A stretch of 64,000 bases of DNA, from positions 124,001 to 188,000 of IMG/VR virus record IMGVR_UViG_3300015261_000001. The stretch is one strand, 5' to 3'. The notes beneath the pieces are model-generated. The model searched no databases and was not told where the DNA came from. It saw nothing but the letters and a program-made list of their open reading frames with translations. How positions within the stretch are numbered: the stretch's first letter is position 1; every line of letters begins with the position of its first letter. The translations under genes and the position numbers were made by a program. Positions 2,168-22,700 of this stretch are shown piece after piece.

Positions 2168-2602
2168 TCAGTCGACGATGGTGAAATTATCAAACAGTCC
2201 TTTCGCAGAGAAATCCACGTGGAACGATTTGGTTTCACAATCCCCATAAGCTGCCTGTTTACCATTTTGCATCTCTTGAACATACCCGTTGATCTCAGTC
2301 CCGCGTTCACGCGAACCCAGTACGTAATACGTCTCGGCCGTGTCAACATAGATCTCGGTAATGGCAGTATTCACGGCAGCGTGGATCTCAGAACTCGCTC
2401 CCATGTTGTTGCCGCTCTTGGTAACCACTAAAGGCTGTTTATTGGGTTCAGTTTTGGTCATGGTCCAAGTATCGGACTTAGCCTCTCTTTCGAGCTTCAC
2501 TTCCGTCCCGCTTTTCAGCGAACATTGAAAGATCAGATCGTCTGCCTGAGCTGGTACAGCAAACATCACCAGCAAAGGAAGTACAACCAACAACTTCTTC
2601 AT
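2168..2602 (-). CDS. Secreted/periplasmic protein with Sec signal peptide
   Basis: MKKLLVVLPLLVMFAVPAQA|DD signal with an A-x-A cleavage site; two Cys in the mature domain; GGAGG RBS. Confidence 0.7.
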   Translation of the reverse strand: MKKLLVVLPLLVMFAVPAQADDLIFQCSLKSGTEVKLEREAKSDTWTMTKTEPNKQPLVVTKSGNNMGASSEIHAAVNTAITEIYVDTAETYYVLGSRERGTEINGYVQEMQNGKQAAYGDCETKSFHVDFSAKGLFDNFTIVD

Positions 2603-3254: not shown

Positions 3255-3326
3255 CCTGAGACCTTCTAAAAGTTAAAATAAAAACAACTACCCAGTACGC
3301 ACCTTACGGTGCGTACTGGGCGTGTT

Positions 3327-4043
3327 TCATGGCTGGGTAACACTATGATCTTTGATGCCGTTGTTAACGACTCGACCCGGAACAATGTTGTTAAAAACGC
3401 TTTCCCCTTTGTGCAGTTTGGACAAACGCCGCAGTTGGGGAAGCATTCGAACAAATACTTCTTCTGGTGGTTGTGTGGCATCGATGACTTCATAACGATC
3501 TACGTCACTAGCCGCCAACTCCAGATATTTCTGACGCATCTTTTCTTGCATCTCAGCGCCGGCCCGATCGAATTGATCGTTATCCTTCTCCCAGCCCGAG
3601 ATACGAGTCATGGCAACTTCAGCAGGAGCATCCAGCAGGAAGGTCATGTGCGGGTAACGATCAATTACCAGTTCATGGAGGTCCACCAGCTTGTGCATCT
3701 CTACACCGTTATAAATGTTCTGGTATGTGAAGGTGGAATCACAGAAGCGGTCACACAGAACAATCTTGCCGGCATCCAAAGCAGGCTGGATAACCTTACT
3801 CATGTGGTCGGCACGCGCTGCGTTAAACAGCAAGGCTACCCCCATTGGGTCAAACGGACGATCGTCCATCGGGAACCCTTTACGCACCAGCTCACGCAAA
3901 TGCTCGGCGGCCGGAGTACCACCCGGTTCACGAGTCAGTACTACTTCAAAACCCTGACCGCGGAACAGGTCAGTCATCTTTTCCTTGACGGTGGACTTGC
4001 CTACACCACCGATACCTTCAATAACAATCAGTAAACCTTTCAT
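3327..4043 (-). CDS. tmk: Thymidylate kinase (dTMP kinase)
   Basis: P-loop IVIEGIGGVGKST, TREPGGT, LLFNAARADH and LCDRFCDST motifs. Confidence 0.95.
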   Translation of the reverse strand: MKGLLIVIEGIGGVGKSTVKEKMTDLFRGQGFEVVLTREPGGTPAAEHLRELVRKGFPMDDRPFDPMGVALLFNAARADHMSKVIQPALDAGKIVLCDRFCDSTFTYQNIYNGVEMHKLVDLHELVIDRYPHMTFLLDAPAEVAMTRISGWEKDNDQFDRAGAEMQEKMRQKYLELAASDVDRYEVIDATQPPEEVFVRMLPQLRRLSKLHKGESVFNNIVPGRVVNNGIKDHSVTQP

Positions 4044-4064: not shown

Positions 4065-4250
4065 TTAGTCGGGTTTGATGTCGAATTCGAAATGCCGAGG
4101 CTTTTCGTTTTGCTTCAAGATACCGGCTGAACCTTCGGGGCGATTGAAATCGTAAGGTCTGCGCTCCGGTGGAACATGGTCATAAATGCGTGTCCCCAGT
4201 TTTTCAAGTGTCTTTGGATCAATCTTCATTTCTTCTTGGGTGTTCTTCAT
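4065..4250 (-). CDS. Small hypothetical protein
   Basis: 61-aa ORF with GGATGGAG RBS, co-oriented within the cluster. Confidence 0.5.
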   Translation of the reverse strand: MKNTQEEMKIDPKTLEKLGTRIYDHVPPERRPYDFNRPEGSAGILKQNEKPRHFEFDIKPD

Positions 4251-4295
4251 GACTCCATCCTCAAGTTAGTTAAACCGTAGGATGGAGTAATGTTG

Positions 4296-4739
4296 TCAGG
4301 TCCGCGGTGCTAGCTTCATTCCGCGATTACCTTGTTTGTTCTTCTGAGCCTGAGCGACAGGTGTGGTGCTGTAAAGCTGCTCGTACGTCATACGAGTATC
4401 AGCACAACACGCTTGATCACGTTTAACCATGGCGGCATGAATAGTGCCGCGCATATCCGCAATGATCCGGTCTTCGGAAACATAATGGTCGCCAGCGCGA
4501 AAAGAATCTTTGAACGGATGAAGAATCAAGTAGGCGCCGTCGTTGGATAATTCCGCCACAGGTTGAGGTGAGTTCGAGAATAGGTAGAAACGAACCCGGT
4601 AAGGGGCTACGTCATACACTACTGTCGTTAATTCATTCACGCCAGTGGCGAACACGGTAGTGATCGGATAAGAGCGGATAACGTCCATCAGCTCTTTGTA
4701 AAGAGCTTCTAACTCTGGAGAACTGTTTTTCGTGCGCAT
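4296..4739 (-). CDS. Hypothetical protein
   Basis: Likely start MRTKN at 4739 (AAGGA RBS), immediately after the ligase stop; 147 aa. Confidence 0.6.
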   Translation of the reverse strand: MRTKNSSPELEALYKELMDVIRSYPITTVFATGVNELTTVVYDVAPYRVRFYLFSNSPQPVAELSNDGAYLILHPFKDSFRAGDHYVSEDRIIADMRGTIHAAMVKRDQACCADTRMTYEQLYSTTPVAQAQKNKQGNRGMKLAPRT

Positions 4740-4746
4740 GTTGTCC

Positions 4747-6084
4747 TTAACCTTCAATCAGTACATGAGGAATGAAACGCTCATTACGGACACCCAGCAC
4801 CGGCGAGTCAAACTCACGAATGCACAACGTGGACGCCGTGGCTTGTTTAATGGAGTTGTAATCAGTAGCTTGGTCAGGAACCATGAACATACCGATAATA
4901 AAGTTGTGACGACCCTCTACTTGATATGGAGGGGTGTAAGCCTGGTACACTTTGTCATCGTTGTAAGGACCATCAGTGCTGAACTGCACCGAGCCATCGG
5001 AGTTGTAGATATCCACGTTGGTGGACATACGACCGACCTTTGGTTTCGAAACGTACTGCTCGCCGCGGGCTTGGAAAATATCCGCACCATCAACATAGGT
5101 TTCGATGGTTGGCAGGTGACCGTACTTGTTAGCAAACACCGAGTCGGTCTGCATCAGGTTGGTAACATACGCCCAGATACCTTTGTTGGAAACAAACCAG
5201 CGCCACGCCGGTTCCAGCATGGTGGTGTAACCAGCCCAGTTCTGCCACTCTTTGTAAGCTTGCGGGAATGTGTCGACCATCTCTTCCCACGGCACCAGCG
5301 CAAAGATCACCGACAGATGATCATCGCCAACAACAAACGGGTTAGTCTTGTTGTTGAAGTCGTACTCGATGTCGTGAACATCGGCAAATAGACAGGTGTT
5401 ATGTTCACCCATGACCTGTGCGATGACTTCACAAGTAGCGGTGTCTTCGAAGCACTTGCTCTCGTGAATAACCGCCGCCGTCCCAGGAATCTCACCCATT
5501 TCTTCAAACAGTGCTTGCAGATTTGGGTAGAAGCTGTTCAGTTGCATTTCGTGTTCGCCGGTAATCGCTTTGCACACAGCGTTCTGCACAGCTACCGATT
5601 CAAACAGCATGGTCGGTGTGTCACCGTTGAATTCGTAAATACCGGTAACAGACTCAGTCACCGGATCGAAAGCGGCGTCAAAGCGGCCGTAGATCGCCTG
5701 ACGGGCACTTCCCATGTCACGGTAGGTGAACTTGGCGTAATCAATGAAGTATGGATGCTTACGCAGGAAATCACAACCCATGTAACGCATGATGGCGTCG
5801 TTGGACAGGTTGAACAGACGACCCACGGCTTCAACCAACATGGCGTAGGCTTCTTCGAAGACCGTTTCGATCTGCGCGCAGGAACTCAAATGCAGGTTGT
5901 ACACCGGCATGTTGGCGCTGTGTTCCAGAGGGAAAGCGAAGTATTCCTTCACGTCCTCAAAGAACTCGCCGTCGGCTTGCGATTCAGGCTTTGGCATCTC
6001 GCGGTAAAACGCTTGAGTCCAAGGCAGTTCCTCGATCATCAGTTTATTCAGATCGAAGTTGATGTTGTGGTAAGTGCAATGCAT
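4747..6084 (-). CDS. Glutathionylspermidine synthase-family ATP-grasp ligase (YgiC/YjfC-like, no amidase domain)
   Basis: Motifs IYGRFD, YEFNGDTPTMLFES, FALVPWEEM, LEPAWRWFVSNKG, YVSKPKVGR, VYQAY, CIRE and RFIPH occur in the order of the Gsp-synthase C-terminal family. Confidence 0.9.
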   Translation of the reverse strand: MHCTYHNINFDLNKLMIEELPWTQAFYREMPKPESQADGEFFEDVKEYFAFPLEHSANMPVYNLHLSSCAQIETVFEEAYAMLVEAVGRLFNLSNDAIMRYMGCDFLRKHPYFIDYAKFTYRDMGSARQAIYGRFDAAFDPVTESVTGIYEFNGDTPTMLFESVAVQNAVCKAITGEHEMQLNSFYPNLQALFEEMGEIPGTAAVIHESKCFEDTATCEVIAQVMGEHNTCLFADVHDIEYDFNNKTNPFVVGDDHLSVIFALVPWEEMVDTFPQAYKEWQNWAGYTTMLEPAWRWFVSNKGIWAYVTNLMQTDSVFANKYGHLPTIETYVDGADIFQARGEQYVSKPKVGRMSTNVDIYNSDGSVQFSTDGPYNDDKVYQAYTPPYQVEGRHNFIIGMFMVPDQATDYNSIKQATASTLCIREFDSPVLGVRNERFIPHVLIEG

Positions 6085-6117
6085 GGAAAATTTCCTTATA
6101 AATGAAAGGGTTACGTA

Positions 6118-6786
6118 TTAGCCGCCTGAACTGCTGCTACCGTGGGAAGACGCACGGGAACTGCTGGAGCTGGCCATGACTGCCTTTGCACGCGAGGCAG
6201 CGGCTGCCTGATAAGTAGCCGGTGCGCTAGTAGGGGAAGAGCGCCACTGAGAAACACGGCTGGTCATGTTGGAACGATAGTTCGGCGAGGAAGTCACGGC
6301 CGAACGGTTGTTGTTCATCAGCATGGAAGTGTACGCAGCGCTGCCAGTGTTGCGGCGTTTGCGGCGTTCTTCTTCGTCATACTGTTGGGTCATCAGTGGA
6401 CGGTTGTTCTGTTGGTATTGTTGGTAGCCGCCGTTGCCGTTCATCATCTTGGCCAGAGCATAGCCACCGAGCGCGGCGGCACCGACACCAGCAACCATCG
6501 GCCATACGGAATCGCTGTTCTGACCACTGGCTTCTTCACGAACGACGTGCATTTCTTTCTGACCGTTGGAGCCGACGGTGTAGTACACGTCTTTAACAGA
6601 TGGGTCTTTGCTTTGCAGTTCACGCAGCGCAGCTTGCTGATCTTTCTCGTCTTCCGCCAGTTGTTGCCGAGTAGCTTGACCAGCCTGTTCGTTGATATAC
6701 GCTTGTTCTTCTTCGTAGTCAGGCTGATCGTCACAGCCGGTCAAGAGAACCATAGCAGAAGCCAGAACTACCATACTCTTTTTCAT
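6118..6786 (-). CDS. Lipoprotein, YgiB/YjfM (DUF1190)-like, ending in Gly-Gly
   Basis: Lipobox MKKSMVVLASAMVLLTG|C; central WPMVAGVGAAALGGYALAKMM hydrophobic/Gly segment; Ser/Arg-rich tail ending SSSSGG; directly upstream of the YgiC-like gene as in bacterial ygiBC. Confidence 0.75.
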   Translation of the reverse strand: MKKSMVVLASAMVLLTGCDDQPDYEEEQAYINEQAGQATRQQLAEDEKDQQAALRELQSKDPSVKDVYYTVGSNGQKEMHVVREEASGQNSDSVWPMVAGVGAAALGGYALAKMMNGNGGYQQYQQNNRPLMTQQYDEEERRKRRNTGSAAYTSMLMNNNRSAVTSSPNYRSNMTSRVSQWRSSPTSAPATYQAAAASRAKAVMASSSSSRASSHGSSSSGG

Positions 6787-6835
6787 TTAGTCTCATTCCT
6801 AACGGTAGGGAAATATCAAGTTGCGCAATAAAGGC

Positions 6836-6853
6836 AGCGGGCCGAAACCCGCT
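6836..6853 (-). terminator. Putative terminator hairpin
   Basis: Minus strand AGCGGGT-TTCG-GCCCGCT (UUCG loop) followed by GCCTTTATT, just after the NUDIX stop. Confidence 0.55.
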
Positions 6854-6863
6854 ACCCAAGGAT

Positions 6864-7682
6864 TTACAGCCCTGCGACTGCTTTGATGGTGCCAACAACT
6901 TCAGCGATGTTCTGAATGATCATTGTCGACCATGGCTCGAAGAACGCGCCTTCAGAGATCGACTGAACGCCATTCACGTGATCCAGCAGCTGCACCGCGC
7001 TGGCCCAGCCGATTGCCGTGTTGTGTTCTTCCTTCATTTCGAACGTGGTGTCCGAATAAGGAATGTAGGAAGCGAAGATCGCGCCGAAGTGGATGTTGCC
7101 GACGAACTTCGGATCAGGCTTGCTGTCCATCACAAACCCGATCGGGTAAGCGTTGTCAGTAGCCACTTGCTCCAGCGCTTGGCGTACTTTGCCGTTGTGC
7201 TCGTCGCTGTAGGCTTGGGAGGTCAGTTCTACTTCTTCACCGAACTCACGGCCCAGATTGTGGTACAGGGTTTCGGTCAAGCAGATGATTTCCGTTTCCA
7301 GTGGATCACGGTCCTCATCAACAGTGAAATAGTTCTTCACGTCAAAGTTGGTTACGTGGCCGGCCGGAGCCAACGACAACTTCATGGTCAATTGGCCTTC
7401 GTTGTTCAGCTTGTTGCGCTGATAGACCAGGAACAGAACGGTGCCGTCGGGCGCAAACTTGTAGGGCAGGTTGTACGCGATCGCTTGGCGCAACAGGTTC
7501 AGCTTCTGGTTCAGAGAACGAACCGAACCCATCATACCGCCGTCCAGCTTCTTCAGGAAAGCCTTGGCGGTGCTAGGGTCCATGATAGTCGCTGCGTTGT
7601 CCTTGATGTGTTCAGCCATGTAACCGGCGTGCACGCCGTAAGTGAACTCAGCGTTTTCTTCGAACTTTTCTTGAATAGACAT
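6864..7682 (-). CDS. NUDIX-family hydrolase (COG4112/YmaB-like predicted phosphoesterase)
   Basis: Likely start MSIQEK at 7682 (AAAGGA RBS; 272 aa). YQR...E..L..K.SL...GH, REFGEEV, GFVMD...VGNIHFGAIF and EPWS motifs. Confidence 0.75.
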   Translation of the reverse strand: MSIQEKFEENAEFTYGVHAGYMAEHIKDNAATIMDPSTAKAFLKKLDGGMMGSVRSLNQKLNLLRQAIAYNLPYKFAPDGTVLFLVYQRNKLNNEGQLTMKLSLAPAGHVTNFDVKNYFTVDEDRDPLETEIICLTETLYHNLGREFGEEVELTSQAYSDEHNGKVRQALEQVATDNAYPIGFVMDSKPDPKFVGNIHFGAIFASYIPYSDTTFEMKEEHNTAIGWASAVQLLDHVNGVQSISEGAFFEPWSTMIIQNIAEVVGTIKAVAGL

Positions 7683-7692
7683 GAGTCGTCCT

Positions 7693-7992
7693 TTAGTGCT
7701 TGGTTTGAGTGGCGGTTGCCAAAGAGATGCGAGTTGCAATAGCATCGCCAATCAACAGCATGGCTTTCTCTGCATCCTTGCGACCGAAGATTTCAGGTTG
7801 TTTCAAACGCAGTTCAATACCGGTCTTGGTACGGACAACCGACGCCAATACAGAGTCCAGCTTGTCTTGCCGGGCAATGTTGAATTGACGGGACGAAATG
7901 CGCTTACCCACCTTCTTCGGGAAATAGACGAGAATGACCGGGGTATTCGGGTCAGACTGTAACGCCATTTCAATTTCAATGTTTTGGTCCAT
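7693..7992 (-). CDS. Hypothetical protein
   Basis: 99-aa ORF tightly co-oriented with the NUDIX gene. Confidence 0.6.
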   Translation of the reverse strand: MDQNIEIEMALQSDPNTPVILVYFPKKVGKRISSRQFNIARQDKLDSVLASVVRTKTGIELRLKQPEIFGRKDAEKAMLLIGDAIATRISLATATQTKH

Positions 7993-13770: not shown

Positions 13771-16700
13771 TTACTTACCTCGGTAAATGGCGATAGCCTG
13801 TTGAGTGACCTGGTAGCCCAATTCGTTGGTCACCAGCTTGTTCCTGAAGCTGAGTACCATCCGGTTGAACATACCTTTAAAGGAAGCCTTGATATCGACC
13901 ACTTGCCCGTCCTTCGTTTTCAGTGGCTTGTCCATGATCCGACCCACGGTCGCTTTCATCTGGTTACCCAACACGTATTTGTCCGCGTTGGTGGAAGCAT
14001 CCAGAGATTCGATGTAGACCATCACGTAGGCTTTGCCTGGAGCAAGCACAGGACGGTTCACGTTAAAGGCGTTGCTGATAGCACCATTCTCCACTGGGGA
14101 ACCTTCAATGCCCGCAGCCCGCTTACGCTCCTTGTCTTTCTTGACAGTGAACGCCCGCAGGTTAGCCGACATCTTGTCCAGTGGGGAGTTGTAGATCACT
14201 TCGATGTGAACTATCTTCCCGTGGTGCTTAGCGCGAATTTGTTTGATGCCGAGTTTATTGACCTCTTCCTTAAACAAATTCGATTTGTCCTCTTCGCCCA
14301 GATGGGCGTCCTCGATATTGCATAAAATCGCATCTTGCTCGATGGAATCACCCACCTTCACCTTCATATCCAAGATCTGTTCCACCTCCATTGGGAACCC
14401 GTTGATCTTGATAAAAGGTGTCCGCGCTTCCATGGCCAACTCTTTCGAAATAGCGATGGAGTCTTCATACACGTCTTGGTCTTCCACCAAGGCAATCCGG
14501 CACATCTTGCCAGCCTTAATAGCCACCTGTCCTGGGCAGAACGGATCACGGGTAAACCAGTTGTCATCCCAACCCAGCACATCACCCTTGGCGAACTTAT
14601 CCCCTACCTTCAAATCCGTAGTCCGAGTATGACGATGGTATTCACCGCTCGCTTCCCCGATCTTCAGACCCAGCGGGTATTTATCCGTCGAGCCATCAGC
14701 GTAAGTAACCGTGAGGCAATCATCGACCAGCTCGGTGACCTTACCAGCGTCCTTGGCCACCTTGCTGTACAGCTCTGACGTGCGGTGAGCCACAATGTTC
14801 TCGTAGCCGGTCCGCAACGTGTTGATCTGGTAGTTCTGAGCACTGACTGCCTGACTTGCTTGAGTCGAGGTAAACGAAGCACGTTTCGGGTCATCGTGAG
14901 TCCCTCCGTACATCAGGTTCATGGTTACCGAACTATCACCAGTAGGCGTACGCTTCTTGTTCAGATCGATGTTGCCCCGGTAGTCAATGATCGCCGGGTC
15001 AGAACTCAGGTAGGTAACGAAACCTACTTTCGAACTGTCCTTGTTGGCCTCAGAGATAATACCTTTATAGCTATCGAGCTGCACCCGAGCGCGTTTAACC
15101 ATGGTGATCTCGCTACGACCGCCATCGCCACCGAAGGTGACTTCTTCCTGATCCTTGAGTTGGTGAATTGGGTTCACTTCCTCGACCAAGTTAACCGACG
15201 TGTCTTTACCGATGTTCAGGATGACGGCGTCAGGGTTGAAGTCCAGCTTGTGCTTACGGCCCTTACCTTTGTTCCGGTATTGGCGAATGGAGCGACACAG
15301 CTCGGTGTAGACGTGACCCGCAAAGCGCTCATAACCAACGATCCGCTGTTCCTCGATTTCCACCTCATGGCGAGCAAAGTCTGTTTCCAGTGCTTTGGCT
15401 GCATCAATCAACAGATAGTGGAAAGAGTTCGACAGACCCATCTTCTCCAAGTCTTCCTTGGTGATCGGATCAATAAACATGTCGAACAGGTTCTTCATTT
15501 CCTGGAACTGCGAAGGCCGTACCCGTGGATCACCCATCAACGCAGGCCAGATGTCCTGCTTGTTGAGATCGCGCATGGAGAAGTTGCCGATGTTGTTCAA
15601 CTTAGGCATGCCGCCGAAGATCAGCGTAGCCAGCTTTTCCCGACGGTTAAAGATCAGGTACTGGTCGTTGAACTGAATAGCGAATTCATCGCTACCCAAT
15701 TTAGGCTTAGTCCCAATCGGTACAGTCCGAGTCGTAGCCTTGGTCACCTTCAACAGCTTCTCGATACCGAAGTAGAAGCACAGCACCACACCCAGAGGGA
15801 ACTGGTAACCGCTGACGTTAATGACAGCATGCTCCAGTGGCGCTTTCTTCAGATCGATGCCCAGCAAACCTTCCAGCGTGCCGATGTCAGTTTCCCCTTG
15901 GTAGAGGTTACCGTAAGCATCGAGCAGCAGTGGCTGTTTATCCTTCACCCCGACCAGGAAACGATCTTTCTTGGTGTACTGCTTGAACTCTGGATGAGCC
16001 TTCAGCAATTCGGAGATCTGGAAATCCAGCTTGGTGTCGCCTACCTGAATAAACTTGTACTGCTTCGCCAGCAACGAGTACAAGCGAGGACTATCGAAAG
16101 CGCGCTCGTACGCACTACCTTTACTGAAGGTGTAACCCCGGGCCTTGGCTTGCAGACCGATCTGCTTCACCATGAACATACCCAAGTTGTCCACGACCTT
16201 CTTGCTGCGCTGTACCATCAGCTTACGATCATAGTAGCTAACCAAAGCGACCTTATCCGGGGCAATCTTGCGGAAAGGCTTTTCACGGCGCTGGTTCTGC
16301 ATGTGTTGCTTCACACCGTCAACCACAAAGGTGCCATCTTTCTGCACAGTGGGTAGACGAGGGTGAATGGTGGTCTGTTCGCCGTTAACGTCATGCACCT
16401 GCACGCTATAAACGTCATAGCTGCCTTCAACGCTGGTGTGGTTCTCCATCTTGAAGTCGTTCATGGCGAAGCCAGCGTTCTGCACACCGAGGAACATCTT
16501 GGCAATGTCCTTCTGGAGGAACTTCTGAGCGTACAACGTCTTCAACTCAGTAGCCCGGCTTTGCAGCATGCTTTCATCGAGCACGGTGATGAAGTTACCT
16601 TCGATCTTTTTCCCAAGGTCTTTCAACTCTTCAGGCTTGATCTGGATAAATTCTTCAAACGTTTGCCCGTTCGGCATTTCGATGTGCTGGTAGCGCATCG

Positions 16701-18108
16701 CTTTACGCATGTAGAACTCTTGTTCCGCGACGGTCAACACACCATTGCGAGCTTTCTCTTCCAGAGCCGCTTTTACACCCGACTCAGGGGTAGGGAATGC
16801 ATCCTTGTTGGTGTTGATTTCAGCCGTAACCTTTTCAACCTCCAACAAAGAGTCATCTACCGCAGAGTTCCATTCTTCAGTACTCTGATTATCGCCTCCC
16901 GCTGCCGGTCCTCCTTCGGTTTCAGGAAGTCGTCCGTCACTCGACGTACCGCTAGCGAACACATCAGCGACAGTACGAGGACCAGGATTAGCACTAGCGG
17001 GTGCATTCTTGCCAGTAGCCTTCCCTGCTTCTCCGTTACCGTCTTGGGATTCTTTTCTTTCTGCGCCTTCCTTTCCGCCAGCCACTTGGGCATTGGCATC
17101 CGTGCCCTGATCGTCGGTTTCCGATCCTTCAGGGGTTTCATTGATCCTTTCCTCTTTAACGATTTCCTTCTCAGGAACGAAATTCCGAGAAAGACCCATC
17201 AAGGCTAAGTAGAGGCGTTTAACAGCGTTCATCCGCGGCGTGGCTTTGACTGCGTTGAACTCATCGCGCGCCGTTCGGTGGTCTTTTGCTTCACGTGGAC
17301 CCGCCTCGTCCAACCAGCCCTTCAACAGACCCATGTTCAGCACCAGAGCCTTACTTTGGAAGGTAAAGATCAGGTGGGTGTGTTCGAGAGCTTTAGCGGA
17401 CAGCTGGTTCCACTGACTGTACTCGTACTGACCAGCCCAGAAGGCCAACATGTCGAGCAGCCAATAACTGCTTTCTGCTTTGGTGCTTTCCACGATCTGT
17501 GGGGACAGCACCGGCTTACCGTCTTTGAAGCTCATGATCCACTTGATGTAATCTTCAGCGAGATCAGTGAAGGCAGGCATGTTCAGCGGCAGTTCAATAC
17601 GCACGTATTGCTGCTTGATACCTTTCTCGGCTTCCATGTTGATGTTTTGCATCATCAACTTGTTAAGGTTCCAGTACTTCTCGTAACTCATGTAAATACT
17701 GGGACGATAAACCAACCGTTGTGGGATCAATCCGTAGTTACGAACGATCAGCACGTTTTCTTTGTTGTACACGGTGTTAATGTCACGGGTCCAGTTGTAC
17801 TGGTAGTGACCAGCCCGGTAGCCCTGAATCGCACGCTTCATATCGAAGGTGTCAACCCGGCCATGACCCATGTCGAACTGCGGCAGCTCCTGCACGAAGT
17901 CAATGTAGACCTCAGCGGGGAAGTTGCTAATAAAAGCTTCACTGTTGCTCGGACCGTAGTCGCCTTGGTTCTTCGGCATGAAGTGCAACAGGCTGGACTT
18001 CGGCAATACGACTTCACTCACCCCAAAGAAACGAGGATTCACCAAGTCTTGCTTTTTGCGCAATACCGTAGCGCGGAAAAACTCGTTATACGTGATAGGG
18101 TTGGCCAT
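13771..18108 (-). CDS. Virion RNA polymerase beta subunit, N-terminal/main part (phiKZ gp178-like)
   Basis: 1445 aa; DGVK, EANKDSSKVG (ET...G), DDPKRASFTSTQASQ (DD.NR...QRQ), RTGYE, EDSIAIS and DKYVLGNQMKATVG (DK...R.G.KG) RpoB-like motifs. Confidence 0.92.
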   Translation of the reverse strand: MANPITYNEFFRATVLRKKQDLVNPRFFGVSEVVLPKSSLLHFMPKNQGDYGPSNSEAFISNFPAEVYIDFVQELPQFDMGHGRVDTFDMKRAIQGYRAGHYQYNWTRDINTVYNKENVLIVRNYGLIPQRLVYRPSIYMSYEKYWNLNKLMMQNINMEAEKGIKQQYVRIELPLNMPAFTDLAEDYIKWIMSFKDGKPVLSPQIVESTKAESSYWLLDMLAFWAGQYEYSQWNQLSAKALEHTHLIFTFQSKALVLNMGLLKGWLDEAGPREAKDHRTARDEFNAVKATPRMNAVKRLYLALMGLSRNFVPEKEIVKEERINETPEGSETDDQGTDANAQVAGGKEGAERKESQDGNGEAGKATGKNAPASANPGPRTVADVFASGTSSDGRLPETEGGPAAGGDNQSTEEWNSAVDDSLLEVEKVTAEINTNKDAFPTPESGVKAALEEKARNGVLTVAEQEFYMRKAMRYQHIEMPNGQTFEEFIQIKPEELKDLGKKIEGNFITVLDESMLQSRATELKTLYAQKFLQKDIAKMFLGVQNAGFAMNDFKMENHTSVEGSYDVYSVQVHDVNGEQTTIHPRLPTVQKDGTFVVDGVKQHMQNQRREKPFRKIAPDKVALVSYYDRKLMVQRSKKVVDNLGMFMVKQIGLQAKARGYTFSKGSAYERAFDSPRLYSLLAKQYKFIQVGDTKLDFQISELLKAHPEFKQYTKKDRFLVGVKDKQPLLLDAYGNLYQGETDIGTLEGLLGIDLKKAPLEHAVINVSGYQFPLGVVLCFYFGIEKLLKVTKATTRTVPIGTKPKLGSDEFAIQFNDQYLIFNRREKLATLIFGGMPKLNNIGNFSMRDLNKQDIWPALMGDPRVRPSQFQEMKNLFDMFIDPITKEDLEKMGLSNSFHYLLIDAAKALETDFARHEVEIEEQRIVGYERFAGHVYTELCRSIRQYRNKGKGRKHKLDFNPDAVILNIGKDTSVNLVEEVNPIHQLKDQEEVTFGGDGGRSEITMVKRARVQLDSYKGIISEANKDSSKVGFVTYLSSDPAIIDYRGNIDLNKKRTPTGDSSVTMNLMYGGTHDDPKRASFTSTQASQAVSAQNYQINTLRTGYENIVAHRTSELYSKVAKDAGKVTELVDDCLTVTYADGSTDKYPLGLKIGEASGEYHRHTRTTDLKVGDKFAKGDVLGWDDNWFTRDPFCPGQVAIKAGKMCRIALVEDQDVYEDSIAISKELAMEARTPFIKINGFPMEVEQILDMKVKVGDSIEQDAILCNIEDAHLGEEDKSNLFKEEVNKLGIKQIRAKHHGKIVHIEVIYNSPLDKMSANLRAFTVKKDKERKRAAGIEGSPVENGAISNAFNVNRPVLAPGKAYVMVYIESLDASTNADKYVLGNQMKATVGRIMDKPLKTKDGQVVDIKASFKGMFNRMVLSFRNKLVTNELGYQVTQQAIAIYRGK

Positions 18109-18113
18109 AAACC

Positions 18114-19730
18114 TTATTCCTCTAACCCACTTGTCGCCGACTTGAACATAAACAAGATGGGTTCGTTAATCGGGTCGTACAGAAAACGTCCTGTACCGCT
18201 GATGTAGTATTCACGCTTACCAAAGAGGTCGTGAACCTGTTCCTTGCTGTCTTCAGCGCAGACACTGTTGCTGTTGAGCTGGTCACCGTCGTGGTCAGAG
18301 TCCAAACCGGCTTCCCGGGAAGGGTCTACCGACATGGCGTCAAAGTAGTCAGGATTCTCTTCACGTGCAGGGTAACGATTACACACTTCCATTTCCGTCC
18401 AACCCATTGGGCTGCGGATAGTGCGTTTGGTAGCACCGGAAGTGGTGAGCAGGTTAACCTTGGCAGGGAAGATCGAACCGATACCAATGATCGGGTAACG
18501 TGTCTGCTGAGTCATCTGTTTAGCGATGGCGTCGTGACAAGACAGGTAGAACAGTTCCATGTACGTCATAGGACGGACATTCTTACGGCTCTTGTCTTCC
18601 GGCAGGTCGTTGATGTCATGCAGTACGCACACATCTTTACCGTCATCGTAGACCAGCGCCAGCCAGTGCCAATCGACCACAATCTCCTTGTTACGGAGCG
18701 AGGTGTCAGCGAAGCCGTTAAACAGCTTATTAAGGCCGGTGTAGGTGGTCCACTTTTCCACCGTAGAGGCAGCCACCTCGACGTACTCGTATTCCATGGT
18801 CTTGGTATTGACCAGTTTGGCTTGAGTCGAACCCTGAGTGAAGATGTTCATCAAATACTTGTTGATCATCGCGTGTACACAAACGTACTGGAAGTTCAAC
18901 AGGCACTGATAAAGTCCCATGTCTACAGAGTTAGGGTCAACACCGTTATCGTCGCGTAGCGTGGCTCTGGAGACCTTACGGGCGGTAATAACGTTACGTG
19001 TACCTGATGCAACGCCCCGAGTGGACATACGCTTCTGGATAATACCGCCTTTACCTTCCTGCAAACCGAACAGAAACTGGTCGATCTCGTTAAAGGCGTT
19101 CTGGATACCCCAACGCACGGTATCGTACAGAGGGTTCTCAGCATCATCCTTGGTTCCTAGCACGACCCGAGTACGGAAGATCAGGTTGCGGTACAGGTCG
19201 GTAATTTCCGGTTCTGTAGGCGCGCCGTTGTCCTGAAACTGGATATCCCGGAGACCCGCAGGAATAACCAGTACTTTATCGGTCAGGGCAATACCACGGT
19301 TTTCATCCACCAGGGTAACGCGCTGCTTCCGCTTATACGAATCAGTGCTGGAGAAGGCGATCTTTTTAAACATCCGGGTGAAAAAACTAAAGCCTGTTTC
19401 ACCCTCCAGGATGTTCGATTTTATGAAATCCTTCGTCTCCTCCTCCCAAACCCCGTATTCCGCCCCGCGCAGAATTCCCTGGTAGAGAGACTTGATCTGA
19501 ATGAGGGCTTTGAGGTAAGTGGGGTTGAAGATCGGCAGCTTCACATCGATGTAAGCTTCGGTATCATCCCGCTCTTTGCTTCCCAACTTACCGAATATTT
19601 CGAGAGAATACAGTCCGTCGTCGTTGAGGTTTTGAGTCATCCCCTCAAAGGCGTCAGTCGAGGTCACTGGTTTGAAGACTCCCGGAACTATTGTCCGGGG
19701 GTCTAATAGAGCTAAGTTGGTAGGCTTCAT
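18114..19730 (-). CDS. Virion RNA polymerase beta' subunit fragment with catalytic site (phiKZ gp180-like)
   Basis: GLYSLEIFG, VIPAGLRD, RYP and the metal-binding DHDGD motif at 18282-18296. Confidence 0.92.
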   Translation of the reverse strand: MKPTNLALLDPRTIVPGVFKPVTSTDAFEGMTQNLNDDGLYSLEIFGKLGSKERDDTEAYIDVKLPIFNPTYLKALIQIKSLYQGILRGAEYGVWEEETKDFIKSNILEGETGFSFFTRMFKKIAFSSTDSYKRKQRVTLVDENRGIALTDKVLVIPAGLRDIQFQDNGAPTEPEITDLYRNLIFRTRVVLGTKDDAENPLYDTVRWGIQNAFNEIDQFLFGLQEGKGGIIQKRMSTRGVASGTRNVITARKVSRATLRDDNGVDPNSVDMGLYQCLLNFQYVCVHAMINKYLMNIFTQGSTQAKLVNTKTMEYEYVEVAASTVEKWTTYTGLNKLFNGFADTSLRNKEIVVDWHWLALVYDDGKDVCVLHDINDLPEDKSRKNVRPMTYMELFYLSCHDAIAKQMTQQTRYPIIGIGSIFPAKVNLLTTSGATKRTIRSPMGWTEMEVCNRYPAREENPDYFDAMSVDPSREAGLDSDHDGDQLNSNSVCAEDSKEQVHDLFGKREYYISGTGRFLYDPINEPILFMFKSATSGLEE

Positions 19731-19759: not shown

Positions 19760-22700
19760 ATGGCTAGCAGTTATGATGACGATTACGATTGGGGGGACGA
19801 TCCCTTTGCCGGTGACATTGATTTTGATACCGATTTCGACAAGGCCAACAAACATGGCTTCTTGCGTTCTGTTGCAACCGGTTTCTTATCTGGCGTAGTT
19901 GAAAAGACCGTCGGCGACACCGATGCTCGTATCGACACCATGAAGATGGTTCTTCCTCGTACGTGGACCAGTGCGTTTAGCACCATAAGCGACATCAATC
20001 GTCGCCGTCGCGCCCTCGTCGATGAAATGAAAGGCGAAACCTTTGGCGTAATGGAAGACCTGCAATACCTCGCTAAGCGCGCGGCTGATAAGGTCAACAA
20101 AATCGCTCCTAATAAGATCGCCGACCAACTGACCCGCTTCAGTGAGAACGATTTTAGCAGCTGGGAAAAGGCTGACAGTGGTAGCGGTGAACAACCACTG
20201 CGTGTCGAAGGTGTTGAAGAGAGCGAAGTTAACGATCTCCTGAACAGCGAGCAAGTTAACAACATCCAACAACGTGAAACTGCGATCGAAGTGGGTCAAT
20301 CCATTACGACCATGATCACGGAAGTGGGTGGTCGCACCATCGGTGGCTTGAATACCCTCAACATGGGGATCAACCGTTCCAACATGTTGCTGGAAAACAT
20401 CGTTGAGTATCAGCGCAAGGTACAGCTGCGTAACGACTCGATGAAACTGAACTTGATGGCTCGCCAGTTCTTGGTGAGTTCGCGTTACTACAAGTTCCAA
20501 GAAGCGGCTCAGCATCGTGTTATTAAAGAGCTGCGTTCGATCGCTACCAGTTCGGCGAAGTCGGACTACGAAAAGACTACCCACAGTCAGGCTATTCGCA
20601 AGACAATGCGGGAGTCGGTGTTCAATACCGTTAAAACGTCTTTTGGTGGGGTTGCTGACTATATCAAGGAACGTGTAGGTAAGGATGCCCGTACCAGCAC
20701 CATCGGTGATATCGGTGAGGCGGCTAGCGGTCTGCGCATGGCGCTGGAAATGACCGAAGGGATGGACCTCAATCTGGGGACTATTCTCGGTAACGCCGCA
20801 GCGGGCATGTTTGTCAACAACTTACCGCGCATGGTCAAGTCGACTAAAGGCCGTCAATACGTCGATAAGTTCAAGAAGCAATTTCCTGATCTGTCGAAGT
20901 GGGCTGAAGAAGCTTACAAACGTATCGAAGACTTGGGTAACGTCGCGTCGTATGGTTTGGGTAACGCCGAAGGTATGGTTAACACCCTCGCTGAGTTCTA
21001 TCAGGGTGGTTTCCACTATGATGAAGACCAGACCTACGAGGAATACGTCGATTCCCTGCCAGCCGGCCAGAAGGCTGTTCCTAAGGTACACTGGGCGTTG
21101 GCTAAAGCAGGTCGTTCGGGCGTCAACAAGCTGAACGAATCGGTTATGAATGACATGTATCATTCGACCGGCACCAGTTACAACCTGCAACGTCGCACTT
21201 TGAAGGATGGCTGGGAGCAAACGCATTGGAGCAAACGTTCTGATCGCACGCTCAACGAAATCCTTCCTGAGTGGTTGAGTCAGATTCACCTGTCGCTGGA
21301 AAAGCTGCGTACCGGTGACGACACCATGAAGGCGCAGTCGTACGACTACGTCCGTGGTGAGTTGGTAGGTCATCAGCAGAAGGTTGCCGATACCTTTAAT
21401 CGGGTGTTTGACCGCCAGCAGTTCCGTAGTCAGGCCGATGCTTCGATGCGTGTGGCTAATTCGTTGGATGATGCTCAAGAGCTGTCCGATGAAGCCAAGA
21501 AAGTCTTGGCGATGCAGTTGGCTAAACATGCTGACAAGAAGAAGGGTTTCAGTCCTTACCTGTACATGAACTTGGAGACCAAAGGTGTAGAGCCTCGAAT
21601 CGCCCAAGAGATCAAAGCTTTGATGCAGCGCAAGTTTGGCATCACTGACGAGATCCACAACGAGTTCAAGGAAGGCGACGATTTCCAACGTAACCTGAAG
21701 ATGATCTACCTCCCTACTGAAGAAGGTCGGGAACGTGCGGCTAAAGTGTTGGGGGATGCAACTAACCTCGGTAACTTCGCGCCAGACATCTCGGAGAACT
21801 TGGACGTCCTGCGTTCCAATGGTTACTACAAGCAGTTGTTGGAGGCTGGGGTAATCACTCGGGTGAATGGTCAGGATCAGGTGAACGTTGACCTGATGTG
21901 GAAGACCCTGCAAGACTTCATCGATGACCCTGAGCGTAAGACCGTTAAGGGTGCTCCGCAAGATGAACCTTTCCGCCGTAGCCGTCCGTTTGGTGGACCT
22001 CGTGGTGATCGTCCTAAAGACGAACAGAACCCGAACCCTCCAGCACCTTACCTACCGGCACCTATTCCACCTGCTCCGCCTCAGGCTGATCCTAAGCCTA
22101 CAGGTCCAGCGCCGTGGTCGGGTCCTTCTGCCGATGCGCCTCTGTCGGTTAAGGGTGAGTACAAAGACGTCATGGAAAGCAGCGGTAAAACGCTGGTGGA
22201 GATTCGGGATGCGATTAACGGTATCGGTGAACGCCTGCGCAAAATGCCGCTCGGTGGTGGCAGTGGCTTAGACCTCACCCCACTGGTCGATAAACTGTCT
22301 GAGCAGAACGACAAGGCTAACACCTACATGGAGCAGATGCTTGCTCTGGCCACTACCCGTAACGACACGCTGACCAAGCTGTTGGAACGTACCCCTATCG
22401 AGGAGAAGTTAAGCCCTCGTGAAGAAGCGGAAATCAAGAGTCAGAAAGCGGGTCTTCTGGACAAGCTGAAGAACACCTCGTTCCGTGACTTCTTTAATAG
22501 TGGTGTGAATAAACTGCTCGATCATGAACCACTGATTCTTGGTGGTCTGTTGGGCGGTATCGCGGGTATGGCGGTGTACAACCCGAAAGCGGCTGCTCTA
22601 GTAGCCGGTGGCTTCGCGGTAGCCTCGGTGTACGGCAAGGTGCGCTCTATGGCCTTCGCTCGTCACGCTAAAGACACCATGGACCTTTATGAGGAAGGTG

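What the first reader, a model, noticed from the sequence alone, without database searches (positions are those of the whole stretch)
4296..6786. Phage-encoded YgiB/YgiC-like module: Gly-Gly-ending lipoprotein paired with an ATP-grasp amide ligase
Seen: a lipobox lipoprotein (LTG|C) with a second hydrophobic segment and a Ser/Arg-rich tail ending exactly in GG, followed 33 bp later by a full Gsp-synthase-type ATP-grasp domain without the CHAP amidase. A terminator-like hairpin separates the pair from the upstream NUDIX gene. Established: bacterial ygiB-ygiC and yjfM-yjfC have this architecture, the function is unknown, and E. coli YgiC is not a Gsp synthetase as I recall. Inference: the ligase may activate the lipoprotein's C-terminal Gly and couple it to an amine (polyamine, Lys side chain or cell-wall peptide), a ubiquitin-like conjugation that a jumbo phage could use to remodel the envelope, exclude superinfection or counter host defence. 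The ligase has non-canonical residues (FALVPWE for FKLYPWE, EPAWR for EPxWK, GRMS for GREG), which hints at a shifted substrate. This is my best candidate for an undescribed system here.
Basis: partly seen in the sequence, partly recalled or inferred. Interest (0 to 1): 0.8.

Follow-up and report, generated by a model that had tools for sequence, protein, structure and literature searches.

The report
Phage copy of YgiB–YgiC ligase cassette
A jumbo phage carries a diverged copy of a bacterial two-gene unit, a membrane lipoprotein plus an ATP-driven enzyme of the family that joins polyamines to peptide ends; the same pair turns up in at least six unrelated phage groups, which makes the unknown natural target of these enzymes easier to test, but the proposed Gly-Gly signal is not conserved in this phage's own clade.

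Summary
On the minus strand, a 222-aa lipobox lipoprotein (6118-6786) ending in GG lies 33 nt upstream of a 445-aa GSP_synth ATP-grasp ligase (4747-6084) that has no amidase domain. A terminator-like hairpin and a NUDIX-fold gene lie upstream.

The ligase keeps every invariant catalytic residue. Its closest solved relatives are E. coli YjfC and YgiC, which RefSeq now names peptide--spermidine ligases (Pederick 2023), so its family is no longer of unknown function.

The lipoprotein gets no Pfam DUF1190 hit. A profile-profile comparison still links its family to DUF1190 (98.5%, reversed control 1%), through the hydrophobic core and tail but not the ectodomain.

All 32 viral loci with this ligase type have the lipoprotein directly upstream. 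No flanking gene is conserved, so this is a mobile two-gene cassette. It occurs in EL-like, Lu11-like, phiPMW-like, PhiW-14, Vibrio and T4-like Aeromonas phages, and in Alcaligenes chromosomes.

Terminal GG holds in 87% of bacterial partners but in only 11 of 26 phage-type partners. The internal hydrophobic segment is too weak to be a clear membrane span, so it is unresolved whether the cytoplasmic ligase can reach the tail.

Verdict: a new variant of a known kind. The idea that the ligase modifies its partner's tail is plausible but unproven. Interest is moderate.

The parts
6118..6786 (-). Partner lipoprotein, 222 aa. It is a phage-type remote relative of DUF1190 (YgiB/YjfM), with an acidic N-domain, a Gly/Ala-rich hydrophobic segment and a basic Ser/Arg-rich tail.
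   Evidence: ORF and translation. phrog_13808, E=5e-43. No Pfam DUF1190 hit. hhalign of its family against diverse DUF1190: 98.5%, E=2.6e-15; reversed control 1.1%. AF2 model pLDDT 84 with no PDB fold match.
6733..6744 (-). Lipobox L-T-G-C (residues 15-18). Cys18 is followed by Asp-Asp; an acidic +2 residue is usual in the family.
   Evidence: a lipobox is present in nearly all homologues, mostly followed by D or E.
6439..6507 (-). Internal Gly/Ala-rich hydrophobic segment (residues 94-116). This is the best conserved link to DUF1190. It is a marginal membrane-span candidate.
   Evidence: BLASTP and hhalign local matches to the YgiB motif. Kyte-Doolittle 1.45. Approximate insertion energy +4.7, against -2.9 to +0.3 for true TM controls.
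6121..6195 (-). C-terminal tail motif (S-R-x-x-x-V-M ... A-S-S-H) followed by a short Gly/Ser tail ending in G-G. This is the proposed acyl substrate of the ligase.
   Evidence: Family C-termini. Low pLDDT for residues 205-222.
4747..6084 (-). Stand-alone GSP_synth-type ATP-grasp carboxylate-amine ligase, 445 aa, of the YgiC/YjfC-like peptide-polyamine ligase family. Phage-type subfamily with an N-terminal extension and inserts.
   Evidence: Pfam GSP_synth 2.3e-42. phrog_6215 8e-102. 25% identity to YgiC and YjfC over the full length. PDB sequence hits 7UK8 and 7UK6. Invariant residues R134, D136, E151, N153, D155, E267, K301, K347, R352, R423. AF2 pLDDT 90; best fold hit YjfC, E=1e-25.
6832..6857 (-). 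Terminator-like hairpin (11-bp stem, UUCG loop, U-rich 3' side) between the NUDIX-like gene and the lipoprotein gene.
   Evidence: RNA fold. Not listed by the consensus terminator scan.
4296..4739 (-). Orphan ORF of 147 aa from its ATG, 7 nt after the ligase stop and preceded by AAGGA. It lies inside the finding's coordinates but is not part of the conserved cassette.
   Evidence: No family hit. No homologue next to the pair in 144 other loci. Atlas: low-confidence model and no meaningful hit.
6864..7751 (-). Upstream neighbour: a divergent NUDIX-fold protein of 295 aa. It is context only and is not conserved beside the cassette.
   Evidence: No Pfam hit. phrog_8902. Atlas links to NUDIX clusters. 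Not syntenic elsewhere.

Best explanation
This is a horizontally mobile two-gene cassette. It is the phage variant of the bacterial DUF1190-lipoprotein / YgiC-YjfC-ligase module.

The ligase is an active cytoplasmic ATP-grasp enzyme. It uses ATP and Mg to form an acyl-phosphate on the C-terminal carboxylate of a peptide and then amidates it with a polyamine. In a pseudomonad host that would be spermidine or putrescine.

The most likely acyl substrate is the flexible Gly/Ser-rich C-terminal tail of the lipoprotein encoded 33 nt upstream. The reaction would turn the tail's terminal carboxylate into a polycationic end. It would take place either at the inner face of the membrane, if the protein spans it, or before export.

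The modified membrane-anchored protein would then alter envelope or membrane homeostasis during infection. This follows the membrane-stress links of ygiBC and yjfMC in E. coli.

What is shown:
- gene anatomy;
- family membership of the ligase, with intact catalytic residues;
- remote homology of the lipoprotein to DUF1190;
- strict synteny across phages and bacteria.

What is inferred:
- polyamine as the amine, from homology and a retained acidic pair;
- the partner's tail as the acyl substrate;
- the envelope role.

My confidence by step is about 0.9 for cassette identity, about 0.65 for peptide-polyamine ligation chemistry, and about 0.35-0.4 for the partner's tail as substrate.
For: Ligase:
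- GSP_synth at 146 bits.
- Closest solved relatives by sequence are YgiC and YjfC. By fold the best hits are YjfC (E=1e-25, TM 0.70/0.79), then GspS and YgiC.
- All family-invariant residues are kept in 10- and 30-sequence alignments. They map onto GspS R316, D318, E330, N332, K498, K533, R538 and R598.
- The acidic pair E391/E392 is kept as E213/D214. The GSH-site Cys338 is Met, as expected for a substrate other than glutathione (the residue roles are from my memory).
- YgiC and YjfC are named peptide--spermidine ligases in RefSeq. The literature held here says the physiological substrate is still unknown.

Coupling of the two genes:
- All 32 viral loci with the phage-type ligase have the lipoprotein directly upstream on the same strand, with a gap of -3 to 386 nt.
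- A partner was found in 48 of 80 bacterial loci by HMM. Most of the remaining loci have a shorter lipoprotein with the same R-G-G-F-G tail motif.
- No other neighbour is conserved.

Tail:
- Terminal GG occurs in 87% of bacterial partners and 42% of phage-type partners, against 4-7% expected, and in 46 of 84 family representatives.
- The last ~18 residues are predicted to be disordered.
- The family's founding reaction, Gsp synthesis, activates the Gly carboxylate of glutathione (established knowledge).
- Spermidine on a protein's C-terminal Gly-Gly has a eukaryotic precedent in SUMO and ubiquitin (PMC12270671).

Charge:
- The N-domain carries net -7 to -11 and the tail net +8 to +15 throughout the family. 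This fits a tail-inside topology.
Against: - Topology is unresolved. The internal hydrophobic segment scores about +4.7 on an approximate insertion scale, with a family median of +4.6, whereas neighbouring genuine TM proteins score -2.9 to +0.3.
- The AF2 model pairs strand 132-136 with the N-domain sheet, which suggests a single periplasmic body. A cytoplasmic ATP-dependent enzyme could then reach the tail only before export.
- In the window's own clade the last residues vary: GG, GS, SS, GT, GM.
- In many short bacterial partners the tail ends in AS, SS or GE. No exact terminal signal is therefore conserved.
- The only activity reported for YgiC and YjfC, as far as I could read, is on peptides in vitro. 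No held paper tests YgiB as a substrate.
- No expression or proteomic data exist for this phage. Only DNA runs from rhizosphere metagenomes hold the sequence.
Confidence: 0.42

Rival explanations
1. The ligase acts on a small soluble peptide or metabolite together with a polyamine, which would amount to polyamine buffering, storage or detoxification during phage DNA replication and packaging. The lipoprotein is not its substrate. It would instead be a membrane or periplasmic partner that senses, anchors or regulates the system, or that binds the exported conjugate.
For: - YgiC and YjfC activity is described as peptide-spermidine ligation, with the physiological substrate unknown.
- The terminal residues of the partner are variable in this clade and in short bacterial partners.
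- The hydrophobic segment is a weak TM candidate, and the AF2 model is compatible with a fully exported protein.
- The ligase has no signal peptide.
Against: - It does not explain why a lipoprotein with a conserved R-G-G-F-like motif and a short flexible tail accompanies the ligase almost everywhere.
- It does not explain why terminal GG is enriched 10- to 20-fold over compositional expectation.
- No transporter or further polyamine gene is conserved beside the phage cassette.
Confidence: 0.33
2. Ubiquitin-like conjugation. The activated C-terminal Gly of the lipoprotein is coupled to a protein Lys side chain or to a peptidoglycan peptide, tethering the lipoprotein covalently to an envelope target.
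For: - The protein ends in GG, and the tail is disordered.
- ATP-grasp enzymes can ligate protein C-termini. RimK and tubulin-tyrosine ligase are examples from established knowledge.
Against: - The nearest characterised relatives use polyamines.
- The acidic pair that I recall as the polyamine site in GspS is retained.
- Peptidoglycan lies in the periplasm, where there is no ATP.
- There is no beta-grasp fold and no E1-like enzyme.
- GG is not conserved in the clade.
Confidence: 0.07
3. The ligase serves DNA hypermodification or nucleotide metabolism, for instance by supplying or attaching putrescine as in PhiW-14 putrescinyl-thymine. The lipoprotein would be incidental.
For: - A homologue is present in PhiW-14.
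- In the window, a dTMP kinase (3327-4043) and a NUDIX-fold gene flank the cassette.
Against: - The flanking nucleotide genes are not conserved beside the cassette in any other locus.
- phiPMW, which has the cassette, was reported to be cut by the restriction enzymes for which it has sites (PMC5587285).
- PhiW-14 also carries the lipoprotein (gp89) upstream of its ligase. The constant partner is therefore an envelope protein and not a nucleotide enzyme.
Confidence: 0.04
4. The two genes are only neighbours. The lipoprotein would be an independent superinfection-exclusion or envelope moron, and the ligase an unrelated auxiliary metabolic gene.
For: - Phage morons often cluster.
- Lu11 has a Cor-like exclusion gene two genes downstream.
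- PHROGs files the ligase under 'moron, auxiliary metabolic gene and host takeover'.
Against: - Synteny holds in 32 of 32 viral loci spanning ligase identities of 30-100%.
- The same pairing occurs in bacteria from several phyla.
- In many loci the two genes are only 3-40 nt apart.
Confidence: 0.06

Closest known systems
E. coli YgiB-YgiC and YjfM-YjfC (DUF1190 lipoprotein plus stand-alone GSP_synth 'peptide--spermidine ligase'; PDB 7UK8/7UKA and 7UK6/7UK7)
   Same: - Same two-gene order, with the lipoprotein immediately upstream of the ligase.
- The ligase is 25% identical over its full length, with all invariant residues kept. YjfC is the best fold match.
- The lipoprotein shares the lipobox, the hydrophobic Gly-rich segment, the basic tail with an R-G-F-type motif, and an end in GG.
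   Different: - The phage-type lipoprotein lacks the 4-Cys ectodomain. It has a helix plus three-strand domain with a D-P-S-V-K-D-x-Y-Y motif instead.
- It gets no Pfam DUF1190 hit, and the N-domains show no profile similarity.
- Its hydrophobic segment is 8 residues longer.
- In its clade the tail ends in variable Gly/Ser and lacks the bacterial [F/M/W]-G-G.
- The ligase has an N-terminal extension of about 50 aa and several inserts, and usually lacks the FKL lysine.
Glutathionylspermidine synthetase/amidase (E. coli GspS) and trypanothione synthetase
   Same: - Same ATP-grasp fold and catalytic residues.
- The chemistry is amidation of a C-terminal Gly carboxylate with spermidine.
   Different: - No CHAP amidase domain.
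- The NCBIfam equivalog for the bifunctional enzyme scores 19.7 bits against a cut-off of 882.
- The GSH-site Cys338 is Met.
- YgiC and YjfC, the nearer relatives, lack Gsp synthetase activity (Sui 2012, as cited).
- The 'glutathionylspermidine synthase' label in phage annotations is therefore probably wrong.
Phage 'glutathionylspermidine synthase' genes already annotated: phiPMW gp102, Lu11 gp277, PhiW-14 gp91, T4-like Aeromonas phages, PHROG 6215
   Same: Same gene family. The window ligase is 61-66% identical to those of Lu11 and HRDY3, and 33-38% identical to those of phiPMW and PhiW-14.
   Different: - Published notes call the function 'unclear' and do not mention the partner (PMC5587285).
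- The conserved upstream lipoprotein (PHROG 13808) is annotated only as hypothetical in these records.
C-terminal protein ligations: RimK on ribosomal protein S6, tubulin-tyrosine ligase, and SUMO/ubiquitin-spermidine conjugates
   Same: - ATP-dependent activation of a protein's C-terminal carboxylate.
- The SUMO/ubiquitin case gives a spermidine amide on a terminal Gly-Gly (PMC12270671).
   Different: - RimK and TTL add amino acids, and they belong to other ATP-grasp branches.
- SUMO and ubiquitin use E1/E2 thioester chemistry.
- None of these involves a lipoprotein partner.
- For the present system the protein substrate is only inferred.

Membership tests
GSP_synth ATP-grasp ligases (Pfam PF03738), YgiC/YjfC branch | Significant match to the family profile over the full domain | tested here: met
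   146 bits against a cut-off of 29.3, covering profile positions 26-370 of 371. phrog_6215, E=8e-102.
GSP_synth ATP-grasp ligases (Pfam PF03738), YgiC/YjfC branch | Conserved ATP/Mg and acyl-phosphate residues (R-x-D, E-x-N-x-D, P-W-E, S-N-K, K-P-x3-R-x3-N, C-terminal R) | tested here: met
   R134, D136, E151, N153, D155, E267, K301, K347, P348, R352, N356 and R423 are invariant or nearly so in alignments A2 and A3. They map onto GspS R316, D318, E330, N332, K498, K533, R538 and R598.
GSP_synth ATP-grasp ligases (Pfam PF03738), YgiC/YjfC branch | Fold of solved members | tested here: met
   AF2 model pLDDT 90.3, pTM 0.92. Foldseek: YjfC 7UK6 at E=1e-25 with TM 0.70/0.79, then GspS and YgiC.
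GSP_synth ATP-grasp ligases (Pfam PF03738), YgiC/YjfC branch | Peptide-polyamine ligase activity | not testable with these tools
   This needs an enzyme assay. The RefSeq product name and the review statement apply only to the E. coli proteins.
Bifunctional glutathionylspermidine synthetase/amidase (GspS) | N-terminal CHAP amidase domain and an equivalog-level match | tested here: not met
   Only GSP_synth is found, in a 445-aa protein. NCBIfam PRK10507 scores 19.7 bits against a cut-off of 882.
DUF1190 (Pfam PF06693; YgiB/YjfM) | Match to the Pfam model | tested here: not met
   No hit at E<=10 for the window protein. Only 11 of 60 family members give weak hits, the best at 1.5e-5.
DUF1190 (Pfam PF06693; YgiB/YjfM) | Remote homology by profile-profile comparison | tested here: met
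   hhalign gives 98.5%, E=2.6e-15, over 184 collinear columns. Reversed control 1.1%. Core without signal peptide and tail 90.6%. For calibration, YjfM itself scores only 20 bits against a YgiB profile, while a phage-family member scores 25.6 bits.
DUF1190 (Pfam PF06693; YgiB/YjfM) | Cys-rich (4-5 Cys) ectodomain | tested here: not met
   There are 0 Cys in the mature N-domain of the window protein and most phage-type members, against 4-5 in bacterial partners. N-domain profiles show no similarity, 0.1%.
DUF1190 (Pfam PF06693; YgiB/YjfM) | Lipobox, and a position directly beside a GSP_synth ligase | tested here: met
   Lipobox L-T-G-C. 33-nt gap. Synteny in 32 of 32 viral loci.
DUF1190 (Pfam PF06693; YgiB/YjfM) | C-terminus [F/M/W]-G-G | tested here: inconclusive
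   The window protein ends S-S-G-G with no aromatic residue at -3. Bacterial partners end in GG in 40 of 46 cases, mostly with F, M or W at -3; phage-type partners end in GG in 11 of 26.
Ubiquitin-like / Pup-like protein conjugation | Beta-grasp or Pup-type modifier with an E1-like or PafA-like activating enzyme | tested here: not met
   The lipoprotein model is a helix plus three-strand sheet plus helices, with no UBL fold hit. The enzyme is an ATP-grasp ligase.
Thymidine hypermodification pathway (PhiW-14 type) | Linkage of the ligase to base-modification genes | tested here: not met
   No flanking gene is conserved beside the cassette. In PhiW-14 the neighbours are the lipoprotein and a small TM protein. 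The rest of the window was not searched for hydroxymethylase or kinase genes.
Known anti-phage defence systems (PADLOC) | Match to any defence-system protein model | tested here: not met
   No hit for the lipoprotein, the ligase, the 147-aa ORF or the NUDIX-like ORF.

The most novel reading that the evidence does not exclude
The cassette is a self-contained system for polyamine modification of a protein C-terminus. An ATP-grasp enzyme would install spermidine or putrescine on the C-terminal carboxylate of its own co-encoded membrane-anchored lipoprotein. That would be the long-sought physiological reaction of the YgiC/YjfC family. At least six unrelated phage lineages would have captured a streamlined version of it to re-tune the host envelope or membrane-stress state during infection.
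Probability: 0.3. Interest if true: 0.75.

Novelty: new variant of a known kind. Interest (0 to 1): 0.5.

Why it matters
The natural substrate of YgiC and YjfC, and the role of YgiB and YjfM, are still open. A 2025 TolC review says so explicitly.

The comparative picture assembled here narrows the question in four ways:
- the ligase almost never travels without a lipoprotein that carries an R-G-F-type motif and a short flexible tail;
- only these two genes move together;
- phages keep a minimal version of the pair;
- terminal GG is strongly enriched but can be dispensed with.

This points to a simple two-protein experiment in a tractable host. It also shows that the widespread phage annotation 'glutathionylspermidine synthase' is probably a misnomer. 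Finally, it shows that the partner gene (PHROG 13808, and PhiW-14 gp89 among others) has been overlooked.

If the tail modification is real, it would be a new kind of bacterial and viral protein modification.

Tried and rejected
- Megablast of the region against phage records found nothing. Protein-level tblastn was needed.
- Pfam DUF1190 gave no hit, even at E=10.
- Comparing the family profile with single YgiB or YjfM sequences was weak: 72% over 21 columns for YgiB, and nothing for YjfM. A diverse DUF1190 alignment built from surveyed loci was needed.
The ligase was used as the anchor instead.
- Contigs holding the bridging family members were too short to give context.
- A search seeded with YgiB returned only close enterobacterial orthologues.
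- The key papers are not held: Pederick 2023, Sui 2012, and Dhamdhere and Zgurskaya 2010. The peptide specificity of YgiC and YjfC, and any statement about YgiB as a substrate, could therefore not be read.
- Fold searches with the lipoprotein model found no solved relative. The only viral hit was PhiW-14 gp89, with a low TM score.
- PADLOC gave no hits.
- No RNA run holds the region.
- The DNA-modification idea suggested by the PhiW-14 hit was considered and set aside.
- The idea that the small TM proteins beside the cassette in other phages are DUF350-like got no Pfam support.
- A co-fold of the ligase with the tail could not be run, because the structure tool takes single chains only.

Full report
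**Anatomy**

All genes lie on the minus strand.

- The 222-aa ORF at 6118-6786 starts with a signal peptide and the lipobox L-T-G-C (Cys18, then D-D).
- Its N-domain (residues 19-93) is acidic, with net charge -11.
- A Gly/Ala-rich hydrophobic segment follows (residues 94-116).
- The tail of about 106 residues is basic, with net charge +10. It contains an R-R-K-R-R cluster, its last 60 residues hold 20 Ser and 5 Arg, and it ends in G-G.
- The 445-aa ORF at 4747-6084 starts 33 nt downstream, behind an AAGGA ribosome-binding site.
- A third ORF (4296-4739, 147 aa from its ATG) starts 7 nt after the ligase stop.
- Upstream, an 11-bp hairpin with a UUCG loop and a U-rich 3' side (6832-6857) follows the stop of a 295-aa ORF.
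- That 295-aa ORF has no Pfam hit. The protein atlas links it to phage NUDIX clusters by features (0.96) and by structure (TM 0.65-0.68).

**The ligase**

- It matches Pfam GSP_synth at 146 bits and nothing else, so there is no amidase domain. It matches phrog_6215 at 8e-102.
- It falls far below the equivalog model for the bifunctional Gsp synthetase/amidase, at 19.7 bits against 882.
- It is 25% identical to E. coli YgiC and YjfC across the whole domain. These are its best PDB sequence hits, ahead of trypanothione synthetase.
- An AF2 model built on 30 homologues (pLDDT 90, pTM 0.92) matches YjfC best (E=1e-25, TM 0.70/0.79), then GspS and YgiC.
- In alignments with phage homologues, YgiC, YjfC and the GspS synthetase domain, all invariant positions are kept: R134, D136, E151, N153, D155, E267, E291-P-x-W294, K301, K347-P348, R352, N356 and R423.
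- These map onto GspS R316, D318, E330, N332, K498, K533, R538 and R598. The acidic pair E391/E392 is kept as E213/D214. Cys338 is Met here and Ser in YgiC and YjfC. The functional roles of those GspS residues are from my memory of the 2006 GspS structure paper and were not verified.

- The FKL lysine is A, I or M in Lu11, phiPMW, PhiW-14 and VPMCC14, but K in HRDY3.
- E-P-A-W-R is a conservative K-to-R change.
- G-R-M-S resembles trypanothione synthetase's G-R-V-G-S.

The phage-type enzymes also share an N-terminal extension and several inserts. I conclude that this is an active stand-alone carboxylate-amine ligase of the YgiC/YjfC branch.

**What is known about that branch**

- Current RefSeq names YgiC and YjfC 'peptide--spermidine ligase'.
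- A 2025 review states that YgiC lacks Gsp synthetase activity, has peptide-spermidine ligase activity (Pederick et al. 2023), and that 'the physiological substrate remains unknown'. It adds that YgiB is a predicted lipoprotein of unknown function (PMC11762307).
- The PSP comparative-genomics paper lists DUF1190 lipoproteins with GSP_synth-like ATP-grasp ligases, DUF350 and PspA in conserved operons (PMC11237479).
- The primary papers are not held.
- No held paper tests YgiB or YjfM as the substrate.
- The phiPMW genome paper calls its homologue's function 'unclear'.

**The lipoprotein**

Direct tests against DUF1190 are weak:
- It has no DUF1190 hit even at E=10. It belongs to phrog_13808, of unknown function.
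- BLASTP against YgiB finds only the hydrophobic segment.

An exhaustive phmmer search found 83 representatives at the 50% identity level:
- Their consensus tail reads R-x-x-G-A-F-S ... S-A-R-S-x-x-Y-S-x-G-G.
- Eleven of 60 give weak DUF1190 hits.

Calibration and profile comparison:
- A YgiB-family HMM scores the bona fide DUF1190 member YjfM at only 20 bits. It scores a phage-family member at 25.6 bits over a collinear full-length alignment.
- Against a diverse DUF1190 alignment built from 50 partners found beside ligases in my survey, hhalign gives 98.5% probability (E=2.6e-15) over 184 collinear columns.
- A reversed template gives 1.1%. The core without signal peptide and tail still gives 90.6% (E=1.3e-6). 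The N-domains alone give 0.1% and the tails alone 5.5%.

So the family is a remote DUF1190 relative. It shares the lipobox, the hydrophobic core segment, the tail architecture and the overall order of parts. Its ectodomain is different: it has no Cys and carries a D-P-S-V-K-D-x-Y-Y motif, where DUF1190 has 4-5 Cys.

The structure models add little on function:
- The AF2 model is confident (pLDDT 84, pTM 0.73). It shows a long helix, a three-strand sheet, several helices and a disordered last ~18 residues.
- It has no PDB fold match.
- Its only viral match is PhiW-14 gp89, with a poor global TM score.

**Distribution and coupling**

Where the window comes from:
- The window's contig is a 238-kb IMG/VR viral contig (L013) found in rhizosphere metagenomes.
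- Its backbone is EL-like. The RNAP beta-like subunit is 66% identical to that of phage EL, and phiKZ-type RNAP and structural PHROGs are present.
- EL itself is not among the 17 Pseudomonas phage records that carry the ligase.

Where the cassette occurs:
- The nearest cassette relatives are in the jumbo phages HRDY3 and Lu11 (66% and 61%), then phiPMW-like phages (about 37%), PhiW-14, Vibrio phage VPMCC14 and T4-like Aeromonas phages.
- In PhiW-14 the unannotated gp89 is the lipoprotein.
- In Aeromonas phage 44RR2.8t the partner is a true 4-Cys DUF1190 protein.

Survey of 145 loci anchored on the ligase:
- All 32 viral loci with a phage-type ligase have the lipoprotein directly upstream on the same strand, with a gap of -3 to 386 nt.
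- Among the bacterial loci, 48 of 80 have an HMM-detectable partner.
- Most of the remainder have a shorter lipoprotein with an [S/T]-R-G-G-F-G motif and a variable tail.
- None of the window's flanking ORFs recurs beside the pair.
- Two Alcaligenaceae genomes carry the phage-type pair among housekeeping genes.
- GC content of the cassette equals that of the window, 51%.

This is a two-gene mobile cassette. It is not a lineage trait of EL- or phiKZ-like phages.

**The Gly-Gly end**

- E. coli YgiB and YjfM end in GG.
- Among 46 distinct bacterial partners, 40 end in GG, usually preceded by F, M or W, against about 4% expected from tail composition.
- Among 26 distinct phage-type partners, 11 end in GG, against about 7% expected. 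The rest end in GS, SS, GT or AS.
- Of the 35 closest homologues of the window protein, 11 end in GG.
- HRDY3 ends in GGGGM and Lu11 in GGSSS.
- Of 84 family representatives, 46 end in GG, 17 in GS and 10 in RR.

Terminal GG is thus a real, strongly enriched family feature, but it is dispensable, particularly in the window's own clade. The more constant features are an Arg-Gly-Phe-type motif 15-25 residues from the end and a short, small-residue, disordered tail.

**Mechanism**

The family's founding reaction activates the Gly carboxylate of glutathione and amidates it with spermidine. The nearest characterised relatives ligate spermidine to peptides. The acidic pair at the presumed amine site is kept, while the GSH-specific Cys is not.

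Taken with the near-obligate pairing and the conserved flexible tail, the most economical model is that the ligase amidates the partner's C-terminal carboxylate with a polyamine. A eukaryotic precedent exists: spermidine on the terminal Gly-Gly of SUMO and ubiquitin (PMC12270671).

The main obstacle is topology.
- The charge asymmetry fits a tail-in, bitopic protein: acidic N-domain, basic tail.
- The hydrophobic segment is weak. Its Kyte-Doolittle value is 1.3-1.7.
- The AF2 model pairs a strand from the 'tail' half with the N-domain sheet.

If the whole protein is exported, modification would have to precede export, or the soluble-peptide rival applies.

My estimates are about 0.9 for cassette identity, about 0.65 for peptide-polyamine chemistry, and 0.35-0.4 for the partner's tail as substrate.

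The biological role is inferred only by analogy with the E. coli membrane-stress links and the PspA/Band-7 contexts. Candidate roles are envelope or membrane homeostasis, exclusion and polyamine handling.

**Verdict**

The YgiB/YgiC analogy and the pairing hold. The 'unknown function', 'exact GG' and 'shifted substrate' points do not.
- It is a new variant of a known kind.
- Interest is moderate. The comparative data make the open question of the YgiC/YjfC substrate directly testable with two proteins, but no new principle is demonstrated.

Noticed in passing
window 13771-18108 and 18114-19730 (- strand), versus 4747-6786: The genome backbone is EL-like: the phiKZ-type RNAP beta-like subunit is 66% identical to that of phage EL. 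Phage EL lacks the cassette, and the nearest cassette relatives are in Lu11 and HRDY3. The cassette has therefore moved between unrelated jumbo-phage lineages.
   Followed up: partly
L009 3077-3998 (Delftia phage PhiW-14 gp89, gp90): PhiW-14 gp89, annotated as hypothetical, is a diverged member of the lipoprotein family and ends in Y-S-S-G-G. A 64-aa two-TM protein (gp90) sits between it and the ligase. A similar small TM protein lies between the pair in phiPMW (gp103) and just after the ligase in HRDY3 and Lu11. None has a Pfam hit, and the window has no equivalent.
   Followed up: partly
L011 1507-5008 (Aeromonas phage 44RR2.8t ORF098c-093c): This T4-like phage carries a true 4-Cys DUF1190 lipoprotein ending in GG and a YgiC-like ligase. 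A Band_7/SPFH lipoprotein lies two genes upstream and the rI lysis-inhibition gene just downstream. This echoes the bacterial PspA/Band-7/DUF1190 operon contexts.
   Followed up: no
L078 4268-6257 and L079 4247-6284 (Alcaligenes endophyticus, Paenalcaligenes hominis): The phage-type lipoprotein-ligase pair (ligase 35% identical) sits in bacterial chromosomes among housekeeping genes, including a SerA-like dehydrogenase, cytochrome c peroxidase, a LysR regulator, carbonic anhydrase and YchF. No phage genes lie within 5 kb.
   Followed up: partly
family representatives P0061, P0062, P0069, P0072, P0074, P0076, P0085, P0089, P0094, P0096, P0113: A subset of longer family members (about 240-340 aa) ends in R-R or R-R-R where the others have a Gly/Ser tail. 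This is a distinct tail class that the C-terminal ligation idea does not account for.
   Followed up: no
window 4254-4291: An inverted repeat with 9-bp arms (ACTCCATCC / GGATGGAGT) and a long loop lies between the 147-aa orphan ORF and the next gene, the 61-aa ORF at 4065-4250.
   Followed up: no
window 3290-3321: A strong bidirectional terminator-like hairpin (13-14 bp stem, 9 G-C pairs) lies just downstream of the dTMP kinase gene (3327-4043, minus strand).
   Followed up: no
window 19760-28108 (+ strand): A 2782-aa ORF matches a tail-fibre PHROG over nearly its whole length and has an embedded endolysin or chitinase-like domain at about residues 2180-2390. It is probably a virion-associated cell-wall hydrolase.
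   Followed up: no
window 2168-2602 (- strand): A 144-aa ORF with a classic cleavable signal peptide (ending A-Q-A) lies a few genes downstream of the cassette. It looks like another exported phage protein and was not analysed.
   Followed up: no
window 6864-7751 (- strand): This 295-aa protein is invisible to the Pfam NUDIX model, yet it carries a near-canonical Nudix-box core (E-x7-R-E-F-G-E-E-V-E-L) and atlas links to NUDIX clusters. It is a divergent phage NUDIX family (phrog_8902, function unknown).
   Followed up: partly
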